From positions 1-64,000 of IMG/VR virus record IMGVR_UViG_3300007735_000804: DNA of 64,000 nucleotides. One strand, given 5' to 3'. Of this stretch, positions 7,658-49,527 are shown piece by piece. Under the pieces are notes generated by a model. That model had not been told where the DNA came from, did not search any database, and saw only the letters and a program-made list of their open reading frames with translations. How positions within the stretch are numbered: the stretch's first letter is position 1; the number at the start of each line of letters is the position of its first letter. Made by a program: the position numbers and the translations under genes.

Positions 7658-8086
7658 TTATTGGTGCTTTTGTAGGTATTTAATCATTTCTTCTAGAAGA
7701 TTTACATTATCACCTACTTGACCCAATACCATATTACAGTTCCTACAAAGCAACTGACGAACTTTACCTGTCTTATGATCGTGGTCTACACAAAGTTTTT
7801 TCCATTTACCATCACCTTCACCTTTACAAATAGCACAAACTCCTTTTTGCTCATCAAACATTTCTTGGTGTTCTTGAAGAGTTATACCATAGTTTCTTTT
7901 CAAGTCATTATTTCTTGTGCGTTCTGGATTATCTTGATGTCTTTTTTTAACTCTTTCTTTATCACATTCTTTACAAGATGAGTGACGAACCATAGTAGTT
8001 TTATTTCTTACATAAAAATCCGTAGCAAGTTTTTCTTTACCACAAGATATACAAGTTCTATAAAGTTCGGAGTATAGTTTAGTCAT
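7658..8086 (-). CDS. Endonuclease VII-like free-standing homing endonuclease (F-CphI-like)
   Basis: CAICK...LCVDHDHKTGKVRQLLCRNCN; directly downstream of intron-bearing psbA, as F-CphI is in S-PM2. Confidence 0.85.
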   Translation of the reverse strand: MTKLYSELYRTCISCGKEKLATDFYVRNKTTMVRHSSCKECDKERVKKRHQDNPERTRNNDLKRNYGITLQEHQEMFDEQKGVCAICKGEGDGKWKKLCVDHDHKTGKVRQLLCRNCNMVLGQVGDNVNLLEEMIKYLQKHQ

Positions 8087-8109
8087 TCGTGTTTTCTTTC
8101 GTGCATAAT

Positions 8110-8117
8110 TATTTATA
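8110..8117 (-). promoter_or_regulatory. T4-type late promoter TATAAATA
   Basis: Exact consensus upstream of the endonuclease; also exact at 33109-33116, 42959-42966 and 49254-49261. Confidence 0.75.
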
Positions 8118-8143
8118 AAAAAAGGAACTCCGAAGAGTTCCTT
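8118..8143 (-). terminator. psbA intrinsic terminator
   Basis: AAGGAACTC-TTCG-GAGTTCCTT followed by a T run. Confidence 0.8.
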
Positions 8144-8152
8144 AACATTATA

Positions 8153-9439
8153 TCACCCGATGGATGGTGCAGTCAAGGCAACCGAAGTTGTTTGAGCAGC
8201 AGCAAGGTCAAGTGGGAAGTTGTGAGCATTCCTTCTGTTTTAACCTCTGTCGCCAGAGGGAGCGGACTATATCATCACTTATAAGAGTGTCGGACGCTAG
8301 TGGCGTATTACGGATGAAGCGTCATCCACCGCCTAGTCTCTGAACCTTCCTTACACGCTTGCAAGGCTTGGATGCTGATTGTCTACAAGAGAGTTCCAGC
8401 AATTCATCCGATTTAACGAGCGCCATGCAGACACAAAACGCTCATGCATTACCTCAATCCCTAAATTAGCAGAATTCAATACATCTGCCCAAGTTTTAAT
8501 AACACGGTTTTGACTATCAGTAATGCTTTGAACAAAGTTAAATCCATTGAGATTATAACTCATAGTAGCAATACCTAAAGAAGTAAACCAAATTCCAACT
8601 ACAGGAAGTGCTGCTAGGAAAAAGTGCAGTGAACGGGAATTATTAAATGATGCGTATTGAAAAATCAATCGACCGAAATACCCGTGAGCAGCAACAATAT
8701 TATAGGTTTCCTCTTCTTGACCAAACTTGTATCCATAGTTTTGTGATTCAGATTCAGTCGTTTCACGAATGAGTGAAGAAGTAACCAAAGAACCGTGCAT
8801 TGCTCCAGCAAATGCACCACCAAAAACACCTGCAACTCCCATCATATGAAAAGGATGCATAAGGATATTGTGTTCTGCTTGGAATACAAGCATAAAGTTA
8901 AAAGTTCCAGAAATACCGAGAGGCATACCATCACTAAAACTTCCTTGTCCAATTGGATAGAGAAGAAATACCGCAGTTGCAGCAATAGCAGGAGCAGAAT
9001 AAGCAACAAAAATCCAAGGACGCATACCAAGACGATAAGAGAGTTCCCACTCTCGCATAGCATACATCCAAATACCAATCAGGAAGTGAAAAACAATTAG
9101 TTGATATTCACCACCATTATATGCCCATTCTTCTAAGGATTGTGCTTCCCAGATTGGGTAAAAGTGCAGTCCAATTGCATTGGACGAAGGAACAACAGCA
9201 CCAGAAATGATGTTGTTTCCCCACATAAGAGAACCAGCAACGGGTTCCCTAATACCGTCAATGTCTGTTGGGGGTGCTGCAATAAAAGCAAGAATAAAGC
9301 AAGCAGTAGCAGCAATAAGACACGGAATCATAATAGTTCCCGACCACCCCACATAAAGTCGGTTGTCGGTAGAAGTAACCCACTGGCAAAAAGATTCCCA
9401 AGGGTTAGTAGAATTGCGTTGTGCAATAGAAGCAGTCAT
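8153..9439 (-). CDS. psbA: Photosystem II D1 protein, 359 aa; exon 1 9439-8438, exon 2 8230-8153
   Basis: MTASIAQR...EVMHER joined to [25 protein letters not shown]; Y161, D170, E189, H190, H198, H215, H272, H332, E333, D342 and A344 are present. Confidence 0.97.
8231..8437 (-). mobile_element. Group I self-splicing intron (207 nt) in psbA after codon 334
   Basis: Exon ends in U and intron ends in G; P1 GAGCGU/GCGCUC; core elements AATTGCTGGAA (P), AATCAGCA (Q), GTTCAGAGACTA (R), ATATAGTCC (S). Confidence 0.95.
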
Positions 9440-9562
9440 TTTCGTTAAAGGGTAAGTAAAAGTCCAGGGGGAACTGGATAGTACGTTATTCCCCACAGCA
9501 CCCTCCACTGTGGGCATGAGAGACGTTTTTATACTCCCCATAGGTCTCGGTTAGTGGGAGTC
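9440..9562 (-). ncRNA. Structured psbA 5' UTR, PhotoRC-II-like motif
   Basis: Hairpin CCCACAG-TGGAGGGTG-CTGTGGG, plus ACTCCC/GGGAGT and GAGAC/GTCTC pairings; family assignment from recall. Confidence 0.6.
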
Positions 9563-9609
9563 ACAGTGTTGCGAAATGTTTTAATTTCGTAACATTTGTT
9601 TACCTATTT

Positions 9610-33591: not shown

Positions 33592-33963
33592 TCAGAAGGA
33601 ATAACGCACCTTCAGTTCACCGCCCATATCAAACACTTTGGACAGTCCACCATATTCACCAGTCACTTTGGCATTCACACCAACATTCTTGGAAACTTTG
33701 GATTTCACACCAACTTCACCAACGGTCACATACTCATTACGGGTAGAACCAGTATTCCACTCATAACCAGGACCGATCTCACCAAAAACAACAACGTTCT
33801 TGGCAACTTTATCTTCATAACCGATACGCAGTTCGGTTTGTGCGGACTTATAGTTGCCGTCAGAAAGAGCAGTAGTGGTCTTGCTTTCTACATAAGGGCC
33901 AGCAAATGCAGCCGAAGCAAGGAAAGGAGTTGCAGCAACAGCTGCGATTGCGGATTTAAACAT
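33592..33963 (-). CDS. Small outer-membrane beta-barrel protein
   Basis: Signal peptide MFKSAIAAVAA...AFA, alternating beta-strands, C-terminal RYSF. Confidence 0.75.
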   Translation of the reverse strand: MFKSAIAAVAATPFLASAAFAGPYVESKTTTALSDGNYKSAQTELRIGYEDKVAKNVVVFGEIGPGYEWNTGSTRNEYVTVGEVGVKSKVSKNVGVNAKVTGEYGGLSKVFDMGGELKVRYSF

Positions 33964-34105: not shown

Positions 34106-34177
34106 AGCGGAGTATCGGATTCGAACCGACGACGAACTGCTTGGAAGGCAGTCATTCTACCACTGAATTAACTCCGC
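34106..34177 (-). tRNA. tRNA-Gly(UCC)
   Basis: ACTGC-CT TCC AA-GCAGT. Confidence 0.93.
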
Positions 34178-34223
34178 AAAGTGGGGGATTTCTCCCCCAA
34201 CACACTTCCTTCACACAAAAGAA

Positions 34224-34252
34224 AGTATAAGACATAATATGAATTATGTCAA
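34224..34252 (-). promoter_or_regulatory. Sigma70 promoter with a palindromic spacer
   Basis: TTGACA-17-TATACT; GACATAAT-N4-ATTATGTC inverted repeat. Confidence 0.75.
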
Positions 34253-34253
34253 G

Positions 34254-34326
34254 AGCCCCCGCTCGGAATCGAACCGAGAATCTTCCGCTTACAAGGCGGA
34301 TGCAGTAACCGTTATGCTACAAGGGC
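34254..34326 (-). tRNA. tRNA-Thr(UGU)
   Basis: TCCGC-CT TGT AA-GCGGA. Confidence 0.93.
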
Positions 34327-34330
34327 AAAT

Positions 34331-34538
34331 GGGTAACGAGTGCCCGTCACCCGCAGAAGACACTTTCTGCAATTTTCACTGCATTAGAGGGCAGTGAATA
34401 AAAACATTTCCAGTAGCCGCTCTTATCTCCCATAAGGAAGATGTAGGCATCGAACCTACAAAGGACAGTCCCGAAGAACTGCTGGGAATTCCACCCAGAA
34501 TGTAGTTTAGAAGAATCAGACATTTCCAATCCCTCTAA
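34331..34538 (-). ncRNA. Unidentified highly structured RNA between tRNA-Asn and tRNA-Thr
   Basis: Seven hairpins plus a possible TTAGAGG/CCTCTAA pseudoknot. Confidence 0.6.
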
Positions 34539-35395: not shown

Positions 35396-36031
35396 TCAAA
35401 CTTCTACCATGATCAGTTTGGAAGCATACTCATGAGCATACGAAGTGCGGGCGCCATGATGCCCCCAACCAATCCAACTATACGCATAGTCCATATAACG
35501 GTTAATCGATTTACCAGGAGTCTTCATACGCTCCTCAATCTTTTGCCATTGGACCTCGTTTGTAAGATAACGAAGTTGCGTATCCAGAGATGATGGTGAC
35601 CCACCATTCCTTCTAGCAAAATCACCCAATCCATAATATCTGTTGGCAGATGTCCATTGAATCAGTCCGTAACCGCCGTAGCAATTACGCCAACTGGTTC
35701 TGCTACCACCTTCGCAAATGTTAGGAATAAAAGTTGATTCCTGACGAATATTACCCATGATGGTAGCAAGGGCGTTTCTGTCTTTAATACCACGATCCTG
35801 GAAGTATGCCAGGGTAGCATTCTCATGTTCATTACACCCTTTACAAATTAGCCTTTTCTCTTTTGGCTTTTCAGCGGGAGCAACCTCTTTGGTCGCTGTC
35901 GGTGTTTCAAACTCCTTAACGATTGCAAATGGCGGAGCATCTACAGGTGGAGGTGGAAACAGGGGCAGTGTTGCCGCATTGGTTGTAACCGTTGCCAGGA
36001 GAGGCAGGGCTACTGTAAAGAAATTTTGCAC
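35396..36031 (-). CDS. Secreted phage-tail-lysozyme-type cell-wall hydrolase
   Basis: IMGNIRQES, GYGLIQWT, QLRYL; probable GTG start and signal peptide. Confidence 0.8.
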   Translation of the reverse strand: MQNFFTVALPLLATVTTNAATLPLFPPPPVDAPPFAIVKEFETPTATKEVAPAEKPKEKRLICKGCNEHENATLAYFQDRGIKDRNALATIMGNIRQESTFIPNICEGGSRTSWRNCYGGYGLIQWTSANRYYGLGDFARRNGGSPSSLDTQLRYLTNEVQWQKIEERMKTPGKSINRYMDYAYSWIGWGHHGARTSYAHEYASKLIMVEV

Positions 36032-36243
36032 TAGTTTTAATTGAACTCTACATCCGTATAGAAAGGGGGTACACCCTCTTCTCAAAGGGCACTTTCCACG
36101 GCTCTAATTGTCACTCAAAGTCTCATTACGAGAAAACCCACCATAAGAATGGGTTTGTTCATAATAAGTTAATATTTATGATTTGTCAAGATGCCAGTTT
36201 AGAAAATGTCTTTCCTAAATAAGCTAGGTTCATATTTAAAAAA

Positions 36244-39285: not shown

Positions 39286-39617
39286 CAAACTCCACCTGTT
39301 CTTGGTTGAACTTGTCCTTCAAGAACTTCAACTCTTTCTTCAAGAGATACAGTTGCTTCAGGAGCAGGTGGTTCTGGTGGTGCTTCTACAACTTCTTCTC
39401 TGCGTGGCTCTTCTTTCTTCTCATCATCCTCACCACCTTTCTTCATCGTGTTAATACCAAATGTGGCAGCGGATGCTGTAAAGACTGTAGCAATAAAGGT
39501 AGGATCCATTTTGGATAGCATACCAGCATAGCTAGCAGTAAGAAGAGCAGCAGACCAACTCAAGATAGAAATACGAATAATCTGACTCATACATTTACCT
39601 TTCTTGTCGTTTTCCAT
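39285..39617 (-). CDS. Two-TM membrane protein, holin candidate
   Basis: Two hydrophobic helices and a charged C-tail; directly downstream of the lysozyme. Confidence 0.55.
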   Translation of the reverse strand: MENDKKGKCMSQIIRISILSWSAALLTASYAGMLSKMDPTFIATVFTASAATFGINTMKKGGEDDEKKEEPRREEVVEAPPEPPAPEATVSLEERVEVLEGQVQPRTGGV

Positions 39618-39635
39618 TTTAGTTTGTGTGTGAAG

Positions 39636-49307: not shown

Positions 49308-49487
49308 TCAAGGAGTTAAATCTTTTGCACCCTTTGCTTTTAGTTGTCCTTGAACTTGTAAAAGAATGAGTGAAAGAATGCCGTTGGACTTTACTTTTGG
49401 GTTTGCGCCAAGTGCTTCAGAAACTGCAAACAGAACTGTTGCAATTAAAGCCTGATTAGCAAGACACCAAGCGATGAGTGCCGACAT
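49308..49487 (-). CDS. 59-aa membrane peptide, holin-like (not in ORF track)
   Basis: MSALIAWCLANQALIATVLFAVSEALGANPKVKSNGILSLILL...; GGAGG RBS and CTAAATA promoter. Confidence 0.65.
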   Translation of the reverse strand: MSALIAWCLANQALIATVLFAVSEALGANPKVKSNGILSLILLQVQGQLKAKGAKDLTP

Positions 49488-49527
49488 GATGACCTCCGTG
49501 TGAAGAGTATCCTGTCTTATTTAGTAA

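What the first reader, a model, noticed from the sequence alone, without database searches (positions are those of the whole stretch)
34178..34252. Candidate ~40-nt sRNA complementary to the leaders of two holin-like genes and to the host Yfr1 motif
Seen: a strong promoter (TTGACA-17-TATACT) would start a leader UGUGUGAAGGAAGUGUGUUGGGGGAGAAAUCCCCCAC ahead of tRNA-Gly. Its 5' UGUGUGAAG pairs with CUUCACACA just before the start of the 2-TM gene at 39617 (39627-39635). It also pairs with CUUCACACG abutting the GGAGG RBS of the holin-like gene at 49487 (49497-49505). It resembles the complement of the cyanobacterial Yfr1 motif ACUCCUCACAC. Inference: an early antisense RNA timing lysis, or a Yfr1 sponge. 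The seeds are only 8-9 nt and I could not count genome-wide occurrences.
Basis: partly seen in the sequence, partly recalled or inferred. Interest (0 to 1): 0.6.

Follow-up and report, generated by a model that had tools for sequence, protein, structure and literature searches.

The report
Phage small RNA antisense to host tRNA-Val

Summary
The proposed phage targets do not hold. CTTCACAC is not enriched, and 179 and 763 of 35,540 genome windows pair with the leader at least as well as the two sites.

The small-RNA idea itself is strongly supported. The module (promoter, then GUGUGAAGGAAGUG, then a covarying hairpin) recurs in 97 viral contigs at the same tRNA-Thr/tRNA-Gly junction. A scan with the 14-mer found 47 stand-alone copies ending in a Rho-independent terminator and 27 copies fused to tRNA-Gly or tRNA-Leu. 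Carriers include Syn9, S-RIM8, S-RIM2, S-SKS1 and S-SRM01. It is not in Rfam 15.

The 14-mer is the exact reverse complement of the host tRNA-Val(CAC) anticodon stem-loop, and 16-17 nt match in many copies. It occurs in at least 85 of 151 Cyanobiaceae genomes. Its seven invariant bases are the complement of the 7-nt anticodon loop. Hosts use GUG for about 47% of Val codons and the phages for 7-11%. No phage examined encodes tRNA-Val(CAC).

Best reading: an anti-tRNA small RNA, released here by RNase P, that binds or disables host tRNA-Val(CAC). This function is inferred, not shown. Pairing with Yfr1 (12 bp with two bulges) remains a weaker rival.

The parts
34224..34252 (-). Sigma-70-type promoter: -35 TTGACA at 34252-34247, 17-nt spacer, -10 TATACT at 34229-34224. 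The predicted start is at 34218-34216.
   Evidence: Consensus scan gives 11 of 12 positions. The promoter is identical or near-identical in 97 IMG/VR contigs, S-SRM01 and S-SKS1. In other lineages different promoters precede the same motif at the same distance.
34231..34250 (-). Inverted repeat GACATAAT-TCAT-ATTATGTC inside the promoter spacer, directly after tRNA-Thr and followed by a U-rich stretch. It is probably the 3' trailer hairpin or weak terminator of the upstream tRNA transcript, overlapping the next promoter (inferred).
   Evidence: The loop varies while the arms stay complementary. Arm variants are GACAAGA/TCTTGTC, GACAGAAT/ATTCTGTC, GACAAAT/ATTTGTC and GACAGGAT/ATCTTGTC (with G-U). 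They occur only where a tRNA lies upstream and are absent from stand-alone copies. No formal pair count was made.
34203..34216 (-). Seed GUGUGAAGGAAGUG at the 5' end of the RNA, predicted unpaired. It is the exact reverse complement of host tRNA-Val(CAC) from just upstream of the anticodon stem, through its 5' strand, to the end of the anticodon loop.
   Evidence: G1-A7 are invariant in alignment A1. The exact 14-mer lies inside tRNA-Val(CAC) of at least 85 of 151 Cyanobiaceae genomes. The leader-seed duplex is -30.8 kcal/mol. The seed is unpaired in the minimum-energy fold.
34182..34199 (-). Hairpin UGGGGGA-GAAA-UCCCCCA: a 7-bp stem with a GNRA loop. It is the structural 3' domain of the small RNA.
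   Evidence: In 38 distinct sequences, 94.4% of cells are paired, 6 of 7 pairs show changes on both sides, and 0 of 500 shuffles reach the observed score. Slid controls give 45-62% paired. In relatives the hairpin is replaced by larger branched domains or by terminator hairpins.
34178..34181 (-). Linker CUUU between the hairpin and tRNA-Gly. RNase P cleavage at 34178/34177 would create the 3' end of the small RNA (inferred).
   Evidence: A 3-6 nt linker is present in all tRNA-linked copies. RNase P cleavage at the tRNA 5' end is established general knowledge and was not tested here.
34106..34177 (-). tRNA-Gly(UCC), co-transcribed downstream partner.
   Evidence: ARAGORN and Rfam, 68.6 bits.
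34253..34326 (-). tRNA-Thr(UGU), upstream neighbour. The Thr-to-Gly junction is conserved in about 90 contigs.
39627..39635 (-). Judged a chance match.
   Evidence: Duplex -13.6 kcal/mol, and 763 of 35,540 windows are as good. The orthologue in G002 reads CUUCACUCA, and the site is absent in S-SKS1.
49497..49505 (-). The 11-mer ACUCUUCACAC is conserved in three phages, but pairing is not exceptional.
   Evidence: Duplex -15.7 kcal/mol, and 179 of 35,540 windows are as good. The same untranslated region is found in G001 and S-SRM01, in S-SRM01 before a different ORF. S-SRM01's seed has an extra A with no compensating change in the site.

Best explanation
The spacer encodes a small RNA of about 40 nt. 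It is transcribed from its own strong sigma-70-type promoter and released from the tRNA-Gly precursor by RNase P.

It belongs to a large family of cyanophage small RNAs. Each has (i) a 5'-terminal single-stranded seed, (CC)GUGUGAAGGAAGUG, (ii) a stable hairpin of variable sequence, and (iii) a 3' end made either by a Rho-independent terminator or by a downstream tRNA.

The seed is antisense to the anticodon stem-loop of the host's single-copy tRNA-Val(CAC). Its first seven bases pair with the whole anticodon loop, UUCACAC. The following bases invade the 5' strand of the anticodon stem and the bases just upstream of it.

Proposed action: the RNA sequesters host tRNA-Val(CAC), or marks it for cleavage. 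This would depress decoding of GUG, the commonest valine codon of the GC-rich host and the rarest in the AT-rich phage. The phage reads its own GUU/GUA codons with tRNA-Val(UAC), which many of these phages carry.

Shown: the anatomy, conservation, hairpin covariation, exact complementarity, host distribution and codon contrast. Inferred: the transcription start, RNase P release, accumulation, binding in vivo and the physiological effect.
For: Family and anatomy:
- 97 contigs hold the promoter pattern, nearly all with the seed, hairpin and tRNA-Gly.
- The 14-mer scan gave 47 copies with a terminator and 27 linked to a tRNA. These sit behind sigma-70-like, -10-only or late (TAAATA) promoters, always 4-11 nt upstream of the seed.
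- Named carriers include Syn9 (the unannotated spacer between gp134 and gp135), S-RIM8 (just after gp23), S-RIM2, S-SKS1 and S-SRM01.
- Hairpin covariation is strong. The invariant columns G1-A7 equal the complement of the anticodon loop.

Target:
- The exact 14-mer occurs once per genome in at least 85 of 151 Cyanobiaceae genomes. In all six loci read, the flanking sequence is that of this tRNA, and ARAGORN called tRNA-Val(CAC) in the four loci submitted to it.
- The preceding CC extends the match to 16 nt in 31 of 74 copies.
- Duplex energies are -27 to -32.5 kcal/mol. This compares with at most -19 for any phage tRNA, -8.4 for host tRNA-Val(UAC), -21.1 for tRNA-Val(GAC) and -21.6 for the best non-self site in the phage genome.
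- Co-folding with the full tRNA is net favourable by 14-17 kcal/mol.

Biological coherence:
- GUG makes up 7-11% of Val codons in 7 phages and 47% in host loci. None of the 7 phages has tRNA-Val(CAC), and 5 have tRNA-Val(UAC).
- Four small, Prochlorococcus-size genomes gave only tRNA-Val(GAC) and tRNA-Val(UAC) and lack the 14-mer.
- 118 of the 142 phage records that match are named Synechococcus phages.
- Two contigs keep the promoter and tRNA-Gly without the seed and hairpin, so tRNA expression does not need the module.
Against: - No expression or end-mapping data exist. The only RNA runs found are stored as contigs and show nothing about starts or ends.
- tRNAs are abundant, tightly folded and modified. 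The folding energies ignore tertiary structure and modifications, so titrating the tRNA may need very high RNA levels.
- Many freshwater tRNA-linked copies carry 1-2 nt changes or insertions at seed positions 8-12. Examples are GAAGUGAAGUG, GAAGGAAAUGUG and S-SRM01's GAAAGG. These leave only the loop complement plus 1-4 stem bases contiguous.
- The bases before the seed are CC in only about 40% of copies.
- In marine phages the RNA sits behind late-type promoters, which fits host shut-off less well.
- The host of this uncultured freshwater phage is unknown. I showed the target in one Cyanobium genome and other Cyanobiaceae, not in the actual host.
- The seed also resembles the host Yfr2 5' motif, so a second or different partner is possible.
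Confidence: 0.5

Rival explanations
1. Yfr1/Yfr10 sponge that mimics Yfr2. The seed binds the host small-RNA motif (C)ACUCCUCACAC and relieves Yfr1 targets such as porins, as the host's own Yfr2 does.
For: - The seed equals the Yfr2 5' motif GUGUGAGGAGUG with two inserted A. It can form 12 bp with two single-A bulges with Yfr1.
- The duplex with Cyanobium Yfr1 is -20.9 kcal/mol, against -23.3 for Yfr2:Yfr1. Only 0.3% of shuffled seeds do as well, and only 4 of 35,540 phage-genome windows pair as well.
- Yfr2 is known to bind Yfr1 through its 5' motif (PMC6778093).
- S-SRM01 has a gene annotated as a porin directly downstream.
- The variant GUGUGGAGG keeps full pairing.
Against: - The two extra A are conserved across marine and freshwater phages although a perfect complement was available. 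The same 14 nt are a perfect, contiguous match to tRNA-Val(CAC), 7-12 kcal/mol better.
- The central GGA that should pair with the essential UCC of Yfr1 is the least conserved part of the seed.
- There is no Yfr2 loop motif and no Rfam hit.
- A different candidate RNA in the same genome, at about 189.9 kb, is a closer Yfr1 complement with 10 contiguous bp.
Confidence: 0.12
2. One reading: an early antisense RNA that pairs with the leaders of the genes at 39617 and 49487 and times lysis.
For: - Both sites lie 10 nt upstream of start codons, and one gene follows an endolysin-like gene.
- The 11-mer ACUCUUCACAC before the 59-aa gene is conserved in the window, G001 and S-SRM01.
- Hits near ORF starts number 6 against a mean of 1.6.
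Against: - The 8-mer is not enriched.
- The duplexes rank 179th and 763rd of 35,540 windows.
- The three conserved sites are orthologous and so count as one event. S-SRM01's seed change is not compensated. The site is mutated in G002 and absent in S-SKS1.
- No common phage target appears among the top sites of seven genomes.
- The seed is invariant in phages that lack these genes.
Confidence: 0.05
3. A purely cis-acting element. It could be a leader needed for transcription, processing or stability of the downstream tRNA, or a tRNA-sensing attenuator. Alternatively it could be a protein-binding or ribosome-binding site, since AAGGAAGUG is one base away from a perfect Shine-Dalgarno sequence.
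For: - In this window the element is physically a tRNA leader.
- The seed matches 8 of 9 positions of the anti-Shine-Dalgarno complement (my own comparison).
- In stand-alone copies a terminator directly follows the seed, as in attenuators.
Against: - The same seed and hairpin occur with no downstream tRNA or ORF dependence in 47 copies.
- Downstream genes have their own late promoters.
- tRNA-Gly is expressed from the same promoter without the element in two contigs.
- The distance to the -10 element varies by 4-11 nt, which argues against a DNA-level promoter element.
- The window's hairpin has no U tract.
Confidence: 0.15
4. A relic or DNA-level site: a captured fragment of a host tRNA-Val gene, or an attachment-site-like core for recombination with the host tRNA gene.
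For: Phages often share short identities with host tRNA genes at integration sites. That is general knowledge and was not tested here.
Against: - Only 14-17 nt match. They cover the 5' half of the anticodon arm rather than the 3' part of the tRNA.
- There is no other tRNA similarity on the opposite strand, and ARAGORN finds no tRNA there.
- The carriers are T4-like phages and S-SKS1.
- The position is fixed at a transcription start and next to a covarying RNA hairpin.
Confidence: 0.03

Closest known systems
Yfr2 family of cyanobacterial small RNAs (Yfr2-Yfr5)
   Same: A small RNA whose extreme 5' end carries an ultraconserved purine-rich motif beginning GUGUGA, followed by a stem-loop and driven by a strong promoter. 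The Yfr2 motif acts by base pairing, binding Yfr1 and Yfr10 (PMC6778093; sequences).
   Different: - The phage seed has two extra A.
- It lacks the Yfr2 loop motif (GUCGAAAC..AGGA).
- It is about half the length and gives no Rfam hit.
- Its perfect partner is a tRNA, not Yfr1.
tRNA-spacer-derived regulators, such as the 3' external transcribed spacer of the E. coli glyW-cysT-leuZ operon
   Same: A regulatory RNA cut out of a tRNA precursor during normal tRNA processing. It acts by base pairing in trans (my own knowledge; the literature list shows the class exists).
   Different: - This one is a 5' leader with its own promoter.
- It is phage-encoded.
- In many relatives it is an independent gene with a terminator.
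- Its presumed partner is a tRNA rather than small RNAs.
T-box riboswitch specifier-anticodon pairing and the retroviral primer-binding site-tRNA pairing
   Same: An RNA that recognises one specific tRNA by Watson-Crick pairing that includes the anticodon loop (T-box), or by a long antisense stretch (HIV-1 and tRNA-Lys3).
   Different: - There is no T-box fold, no acceptor-end contact and no downstream antiterminator.
- Pairing is 14-17 nt and would unwind the anticodon stem.
- It is a trans-acting phage RNA.
Non-coding RNAs already reported in cyanophages: CfrI antisense RNA, PhotoRC-II, wcaG, glnA, manA and abiF
   Same: Non-coding RNAs of T4-like cyanophages. wcaG and PhotoRC-II are present in this window.
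   Different: None has this motif or position. A 2023 paper that names these cyanophage non-coding RNAs does not mention this one (PMC9964418).
Small stable RNAs of the phage T4 tRNA cluster (species 1 and 2)
   Same: Non-tRNA stable RNAs co-transcribed and processed within a phage tRNA gene cluster (my own knowledge).
   Different: The T4 RNAs are larger, of unknown function, and have no reported antisense relation to a host tRNA. No sequence comparison was made here.

Membership tests
Cyanophage GUGUGAAGGAAGUG small-RNA family (defined here) | The seed begins 4-11 nt downstream of a -10-type promoter element. | tested here: met
   In the window, TATACT ends at 34224 and the seed starts at 34216. 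The same spacing holds across the family.
Cyanophage GUGUGAAGGAAGUG small-RNA family (defined here) | A stable hairpin 2-6 nt after the seed, conserved as structure rather than sequence. | tested here: met
   94.4% paired, and 6 of 7 pairs carry compensatory changes.
Cyanophage GUGUGAAGGAAGUG small-RNA family (defined here) | A 3' end defined by a terminator U tract or by an abutting tRNA. | tested here: met
   tRNA-Gly begins 4 nt after the hairpin. The family census gives 47 terminator copies and 27 tRNA-linked copies.
Cyanophage GUGUGAAGGAAGUG small-RNA family (defined here) | The RNA accumulates as a discrete species. | not testable with these tools
   Only contig-level RNA runs were available.
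Yfr2 family | 5' motif GUGUGAGGAGUG. | tested here: not met
   The phage motif has two inserted A.
Yfr2 family | Conserved loop motif GUCGAAAC(A/G)AGGA in the first stem-loop, and a match to curated RNA family models. | tested here: not met
   The hairpin loop is GAAA or GCAA. No Rfam hit appears even at E up to 10.
Hfq-type or terminator-ended trans-acting small RNA (generic) | A Rho-independent terminator with a U tail at the 3' end. | tested here: not met
   In the window's copy the hairpin is followed by CUUU and then the tRNA. The feature is met in 47 relatives.
tRNA-precursor-derived regulatory spacer (external-transcribed-spacer type) | Excised from a tRNA precursor by RNase P or RNase E and stable afterwards. 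| not testable with these tools
   The position fits, with a leader abutting tRNA-Gly. Processing and stability are inferred.
T-box riboswitch | Stem I with a specifier loop, plus a T-box antiterminator that pairs with the tRNA acceptor end. | tested here: not met
   Rfam gives no T-box hit. The only structure is one 7-bp hairpin.
Antisense regulator of host tRNA-Val(CAC) (functional class proposed here) | Contiguous complementarity to the tRNA anticodon loop and stem, specific for one isoacceptor. | tested here: met
   14 nt match exactly, and 16-17 nt in many copies. Duplex energies are -29.9 for tRNA-Val(CAC), -21.1 for tRNA-Val(GAC) and -8.4 for tRNA-Val(UAC).
Antisense regulator of host tRNA-Val(CAC) (functional class proposed here) | Physical binding to the tRNA and an effect on it in infected cells. 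| not testable with these tools
   This needs experiments.

The most novel reading that the evidence does not exclude
Cyanophages of Synechococcus and Cyanobium carry a dedicated anti-tRNA small RNA. It docks on the anticodon loop of host tRNA-Val(CAC), unwinds its anticodon stem and so removes the decoder of the host's favourite valine codon. This would be codon-biased host shut-off achieved by RNA alone. The phage translates its GUG-poor genes with tRNA-Val(UAC). In one lineage the RNA has been fused to a phage tRNA gene, so that RNase P makes its 3' end.
Probability: 0.4. Interest if true: 0.92.

Novelty: new variant of a known kind. Interest (0 to 1): 0.82.

Why it matters
If the RNA really binds tRNA-Val(CAC), it would be, to my knowledge, the first trans-encoded small RNA known to target a host tRNA. 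It would also be a new way for a virus to exploit the codon-usage gap between itself and its host.

That would complement the long-debated role of phage tRNA genes and the recent evidence that tRNA supply decides cyanophage infection outcomes. The family is present in well-studied model phages (Syn9, S-RIM8, S-RIM2), so the hypothesis can be tested directly.

Even if the target proves different, this is a large, ultraconserved and unannotated RNA family of abundant marine and freshwater viruses. It has an unusual dual way of forming its 3' end, by terminator or by tRNA.

Tried and rejected
- **Rfam.** I scanned the window at gathering thresholds, the spacer at E up to 10, and 14 related loci including stand-alone copies. 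Only tRNAs, wcaG, PhotoRC-II, a group I intron and abiF appeared, and nothing at the element.
- **Public reads.** The phage is present in river, lake and sediment metagenomes. The four RNA-type runs are stored as contigs and gave no starts, ends or strand. Expression therefore remains unshown.
- **8-mer enrichment.** Enrichment overall and near start codons is at or near chance.
- **Genome-wide duplex scans of seven phage genomes.** No conserved phage target emerged. The top non-self sites are scattered in coding or antisense DNA.
- **Host search with the 12-mer complement, one mismatch allowed.** Counts equalled the controls. This looked negative at first, but the exact hits later proved to be the tRNA.
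- **A guessed Rfam accession for Yfr1.** It was wrong: RF00621 is a different family. Yfr1 and Yfr2 were found by motif search instead.
- **CGRE1 operator of Yfr2 promoters.** It lies at -55 and has a different sequence, so it is not the promoter palindrome seen here.
- **A codon-anticodon link to the downstream tRNA-Gly.** GGAAG in the seed could pair with CUUCC in its anticodon loop. I rejected this because GGA is not conserved and the module also precedes tRNA-Leu, tRNA-Ile or no tRNA at all.
- **A boxA/boxB-like antitermination site.** I considered this from memory only and did not pursue it.
- **Literature.** Ten full-text searches and several papers gave no description of this motif or of a phage RNA antisense to a tRNA. 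The Syn9 transcriptome paper (PMC5029184) is not held, so I could not check whether it reports a transcript between gp134 and gp135.
Full report
**What the window is**

The window is the first 64 kb of a 213,274-bp single-contig virus record. It carries psbA with a group I intron, PhotoRC-II and wcaG RNAs, and ten tRNA genes. Its nearest named relative is the freshwater Synechococcus phage S-SRM01, of the Kyanoviridae. Runs that hold its DNA come from river, lake and sediment metagenomes.

**Checking the observation**

The feature lies on the minus strand.
- tRNA-Thr(UGU) ends at 34253.
- TTGACA (34252-34247), a 17-nt spacer and TATACT (34229-34224) form an 11-of-12 consensus promoter.
- Six to eight bases later the sequence reads (U)GUGUGAAGGAAGUG (34216-34203), then UGU.
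- The hairpin UGGGGGA-GAAA-UCCCCCA follows (34199-34182), then CUUU, and tRNA-Gly(UCC) starts at 34177.
- The gene upstream of the first site matches endolysin families, so "holin-like" is reasonable for the 110-aa two-helix protein. The second gene is a 59-aa membrane protein among structural genes.

**The proposed phage targets are at chance level**

- CTTCACAC occurs 3 times in the window against 1.9 expected and 8 times in the whole genome.
- It occurs 34 times in five related genomes, against a mean of 35.8 for the 420 same-composition permutations.
- The apparent excess near ORF starts (6 against 1.6) shrinks to two independent loci once the self-antisense site, an intragenic site and two orthologous copies are discounted.
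- I scanned all 35,540 overlapping 36-nt windows of the genome for duplexes with the leader's 18-nt single-stranded part. 179 windows pair at least as well as the 49.5-kb site (-15.7 kcal/mol). 763 windows pair at least as well as the 39.6-kb site (-13.6 kcal/mol).
- The 39.6-kb site is altered in relative G002 and absent in S-SKS1.
- The 49.5-kb leader is conserved in G001 and S-SRM01. However, S-SRM01's seed carries an extra A without a matching change in the site.

**The leader itself is far from ordinary**

- A scan of IMG/VR with the promoter pattern found 97 contigs.
- In about 90 of them the order is tRNA-Thr, promoter, GUGUGAAGG-type seed, structured domain, 3-6 nt linker, tRNA-Gly. 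The tRNA-Gly sequences themselves differ a lot.
- The structured domain is a 6-7 bp GNRA hairpin, a roughly 45-nt bifurcated stem or a roughly 75-nt three-way junction. All are closed by the same kind of basal stem.
- In an alignment of 38 distinct short forms, the hairpin is paired in 94.4% of cells. Six of seven pairs show changes on both sides, no shuffle out of 500 reaches the observed score, and slid registers give only 45-62% paired.
- The only invariant columns of the leader are G1 to A7 of the seed, plus one hairpin base.
- The marine phage S-SKS1, of a different genus, has the same seed and hairpin between tRNA-Lys and tRNA-Gly.
- Two contigs keep the promoter and tRNA-Gly but have only a 10-nt leader. 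The module is therefore not needed to express the tRNA.

**The same RNA exists as a stand-alone gene**

It returned 118 instances.
- 47 are stand-alone genes: a -10 element (TATAAT, often TGTGATATAAT), a late-type (C)TAAATA or a full TTGACA-17-TAATAT promoter. Then come 4-11 nt, (CC)GUGUGAAGGAAGUG, 2-6 nt, a GC-rich hairpin and a run of at least five T.
- 27 are fused to tRNA-Gly(UCC), tRNA-Leu(UAA) or tRNA-Leu(UAG).
- 44 were not classified, and many of these are chance hits in coding DNA of unrelated viruses.

Promoter spacers differ completely between lineages while the seed and its distance from the -10 element stay the same. This places the seed at the 5' end of a primary transcript.

BLAST of one stand-alone copy hits 142 phage records, of which 118 are named Synechococcus phages. 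In Syn9 the RNA lies in the unannotated 50-bp spacer between gp134 and gp135. In S-RIM8 it lies directly after the gp23 major capsid gene.

No Rfam 15 family matches any form. Neither the papers I could search nor a 2023 paper that names cyanophage non-coding RNAs mentions it.

**What the seed pairs with**

- The Yfr1 motif ACUCCUCACAC is present in all 41 Cyanobiaceae genomes sampled.
- Reading the loci gave both Yfr1 and, on the opposite strand, Yfr2 genes whose 5' ends read GUGUGAGGAGUG.
- The phage seed is that Yfr2 motif with two inserted A. It can form 12 bp with two bulges with Yfr1. The energy is -20.9 kcal/mol, against -23.3 for Yfr2:Yfr1, and only 0.3% of shuffled seeds do as well.

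I then asked whether hosts carry the phage 14-mer itself.
- It occurs exactly, and as a rule once, in at least 85 of 151 Cyanobiaceae genomes. About 0.02 per genome is expected by chance.
- In all six loci read, it lies in the reverse complement of a tRNA gene. ARAGORN called that gene tRNA-Val(CAC) in the four loci submitted to it.
- The tRNA's anticodon stem is CUUCC/GGAAG and its loop is UUCACAC.
- The seed therefore pairs perfectly with the bases just upstream of the anticodon stem, the 5' strand of that stem and the whole anticodon loop. The CC that precedes the seed in 31 of 74 classified copies extends pairing into the 3' strand, giving 16 nt, or 17 nt in Syn9.
- The seven invariant seed bases are exactly the complement of the seven loop bases.

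Duplex energies of seven phages' own seeds with this tRNA are -27.2 to -32.5 kcal/mol. That is essentially as good as with their own antisense strand. Comparison values are:

| Partner | Duplex energy (kcal/mol) |
|---|---|
| Host tRNA-Val(CAC), seven phage seeds | -27.2 to -32.5 |
| Any phage-encoded tRNA | -9.4 to -19.2 |
| tRNA-Val(GAC) of small-genome relatives | -21.1 |
| Host tRNA-Val(UAC) | -8.4 |
| Best non-self site in the 213-kb phage genome | -21.6 |

Co-folding the full leader with the full tRNA predicts the intermolecular helix. The net gain is 14-17 kcal/mol after paying for the lost tRNA stems. Tertiary structure and modifications are ignored in this calculation.

**Biological coherence**

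- In long ORFs of seven phages, GUG makes up 7-11% of valine codons (5-8 per 1000 codons). In 29 ORFs from the host loci fetched, it makes up 47% (34 per 1000).
- None of the seven phages encodes tRNA-Val(CAC). Five encode tRNA-Val(UAC).
- Four Prochlorococcus-size genomes gave only tRNA-Val(GAC) and tRNA-Val(UAC). This matches the absence of the 14-mer from small genomes and the predominance of Synechococcus phages among carriers. That last count is biased by the query used.

**Mechanism proposed**

Steps marked "inferred" are not shown by any result here.
1. Transcription starts at about 34217-34216 (inferred from promoter geometry and family-wide spacing).
2. RNase P cuts at 34178/34177 and frees a roughly 40-nt RNA. 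Its 3' hairpin protects it, as the terminator hairpin does in stand-alone relatives (inferred).
3. The unpaired 5' GUGUGAA docks on the pre-organised anticodon loop. Pairing then spreads into the stem (inferred from complementarity and energies).
4. The tRNA is then unavailable for decoding or becomes a nuclease substrate. This selectively slows translation of GUG-rich host messages (inferred).

I put this at about 0.5. That the element is a member of this small-RNA family I put at about 0.9.

**Rivals**

- A Yfr1 sponge remains possible (0.12).
- A cis-acting or protein-binding role is possible (0.15).
- A DNA-level relic or attachment-like site is very unlikely (0.03).

**Main weaknesses of the preferred model**

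- There is no expression evidence.
- Seed positions 8-12 are degenerate in many freshwater copies.
- Marine copies sit behind late-type promoters.
- The host of this particular phage is unknown.

**The inverted repeat inside the promoter**

Within the finding's coordinates, the promoter spacer holds an 8-bp inverted repeat (34250-34231). Its arms change in a compensatory way among lineages, including G-U pairs. It occurs only where a tRNA lies immediately upstream. I read it as the trailer hairpin or weak terminator of the upstream tRNA transcript, overlapping the next promoter.

Noticed in passing
Same genome, outside the window: G000:C1 about 189,830-189,965, minus strand (L147 820-965): A second candidate small-RNA gene of about 110 nt. 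It has a perfect TTGACA-17-TATAAT promoter, a 9-bp stem, a hairpin CUCUUC-GGUGGUGU-GAAGAG and a Rho-independent terminator. The fold z-score is -3.4. It is conserved in S-SRM01, with compensatory terminator changes, and in G002. Its GGUGGUGUGAAGAGG is a near-complement of the picocyanobacterial Yfr1 sequence ACUCCUCACACCACC (10 contiguous bp plus 3). It is not in Rfam.
   Followed up: partly
window 34327-34420, minus strand: An ~85-nt stretch just upstream of tRNA-Thr forms three hairpins. It is conserved in S-SRM01, with at least one compensatory change (A-U to G-C in the middle hairpin) and one G-U to G-C change. It may be a further stable non-tRNA RNA inside the tRNA array.
   Followed up: partly
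window 34440-34535, minus strand: The spacer between tRNA-Asn and the stretch above contains a T-arm-like hairpin (GUAGGUUCGAUGCCUAC) and a second stem. ARAGORN calls no tRNA here. It may be a decayed tRNA or a tRNA-like element.
   Followed up: no
window 49497-49525, minus strand: A late-promoter-like CTAAATAA is followed by a conserved leader that contains ACUCUUCACAC, which is the Yfr1 motif with one change. The leader is shared by the window, G001 and S-SRM01, although the ORF behind it differs in S-SRM01.
   Followed up: partly
window 7658-9541, minus strand: psbA is interrupted by a group I intron (Rfam, 8243-8482). A 142-aa ORF downstream of it (7658-8086) carries an HNH-like motif, so it is probably a homing endonuclease. 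A PhotoRC-II RNA lies upstream of psbA (9478-9571).
   Followed up: no
window 35396-36085, minus strand: The 229-aa ORF here is covered at by far the highest contig depth in three freshwater or aquatic metatranscriptome runs (summed contig depth up to about 2,400). Relatives of this gene therefore appear highly represented in RNA libraries.
   Followed up: no
window 33592-33963, minus strand; L001 1391-2851: The gene directly downstream of tRNA-Gly encodes a signal-peptide protein in the window (phrog_417, DUF680-like by its relatives' annotation). In S-SRM01 the corresponding gene is a 487-aa protein annotated as a porin. This is of interest because Yfr1 is reported to control porin mRNAs.
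   Followed up: no
L033 3723-3759: An abiF RNA (Rfam RF03085, 49.3 bits) lies inside the tRNA array of a related viral contig.
   Followed up: no
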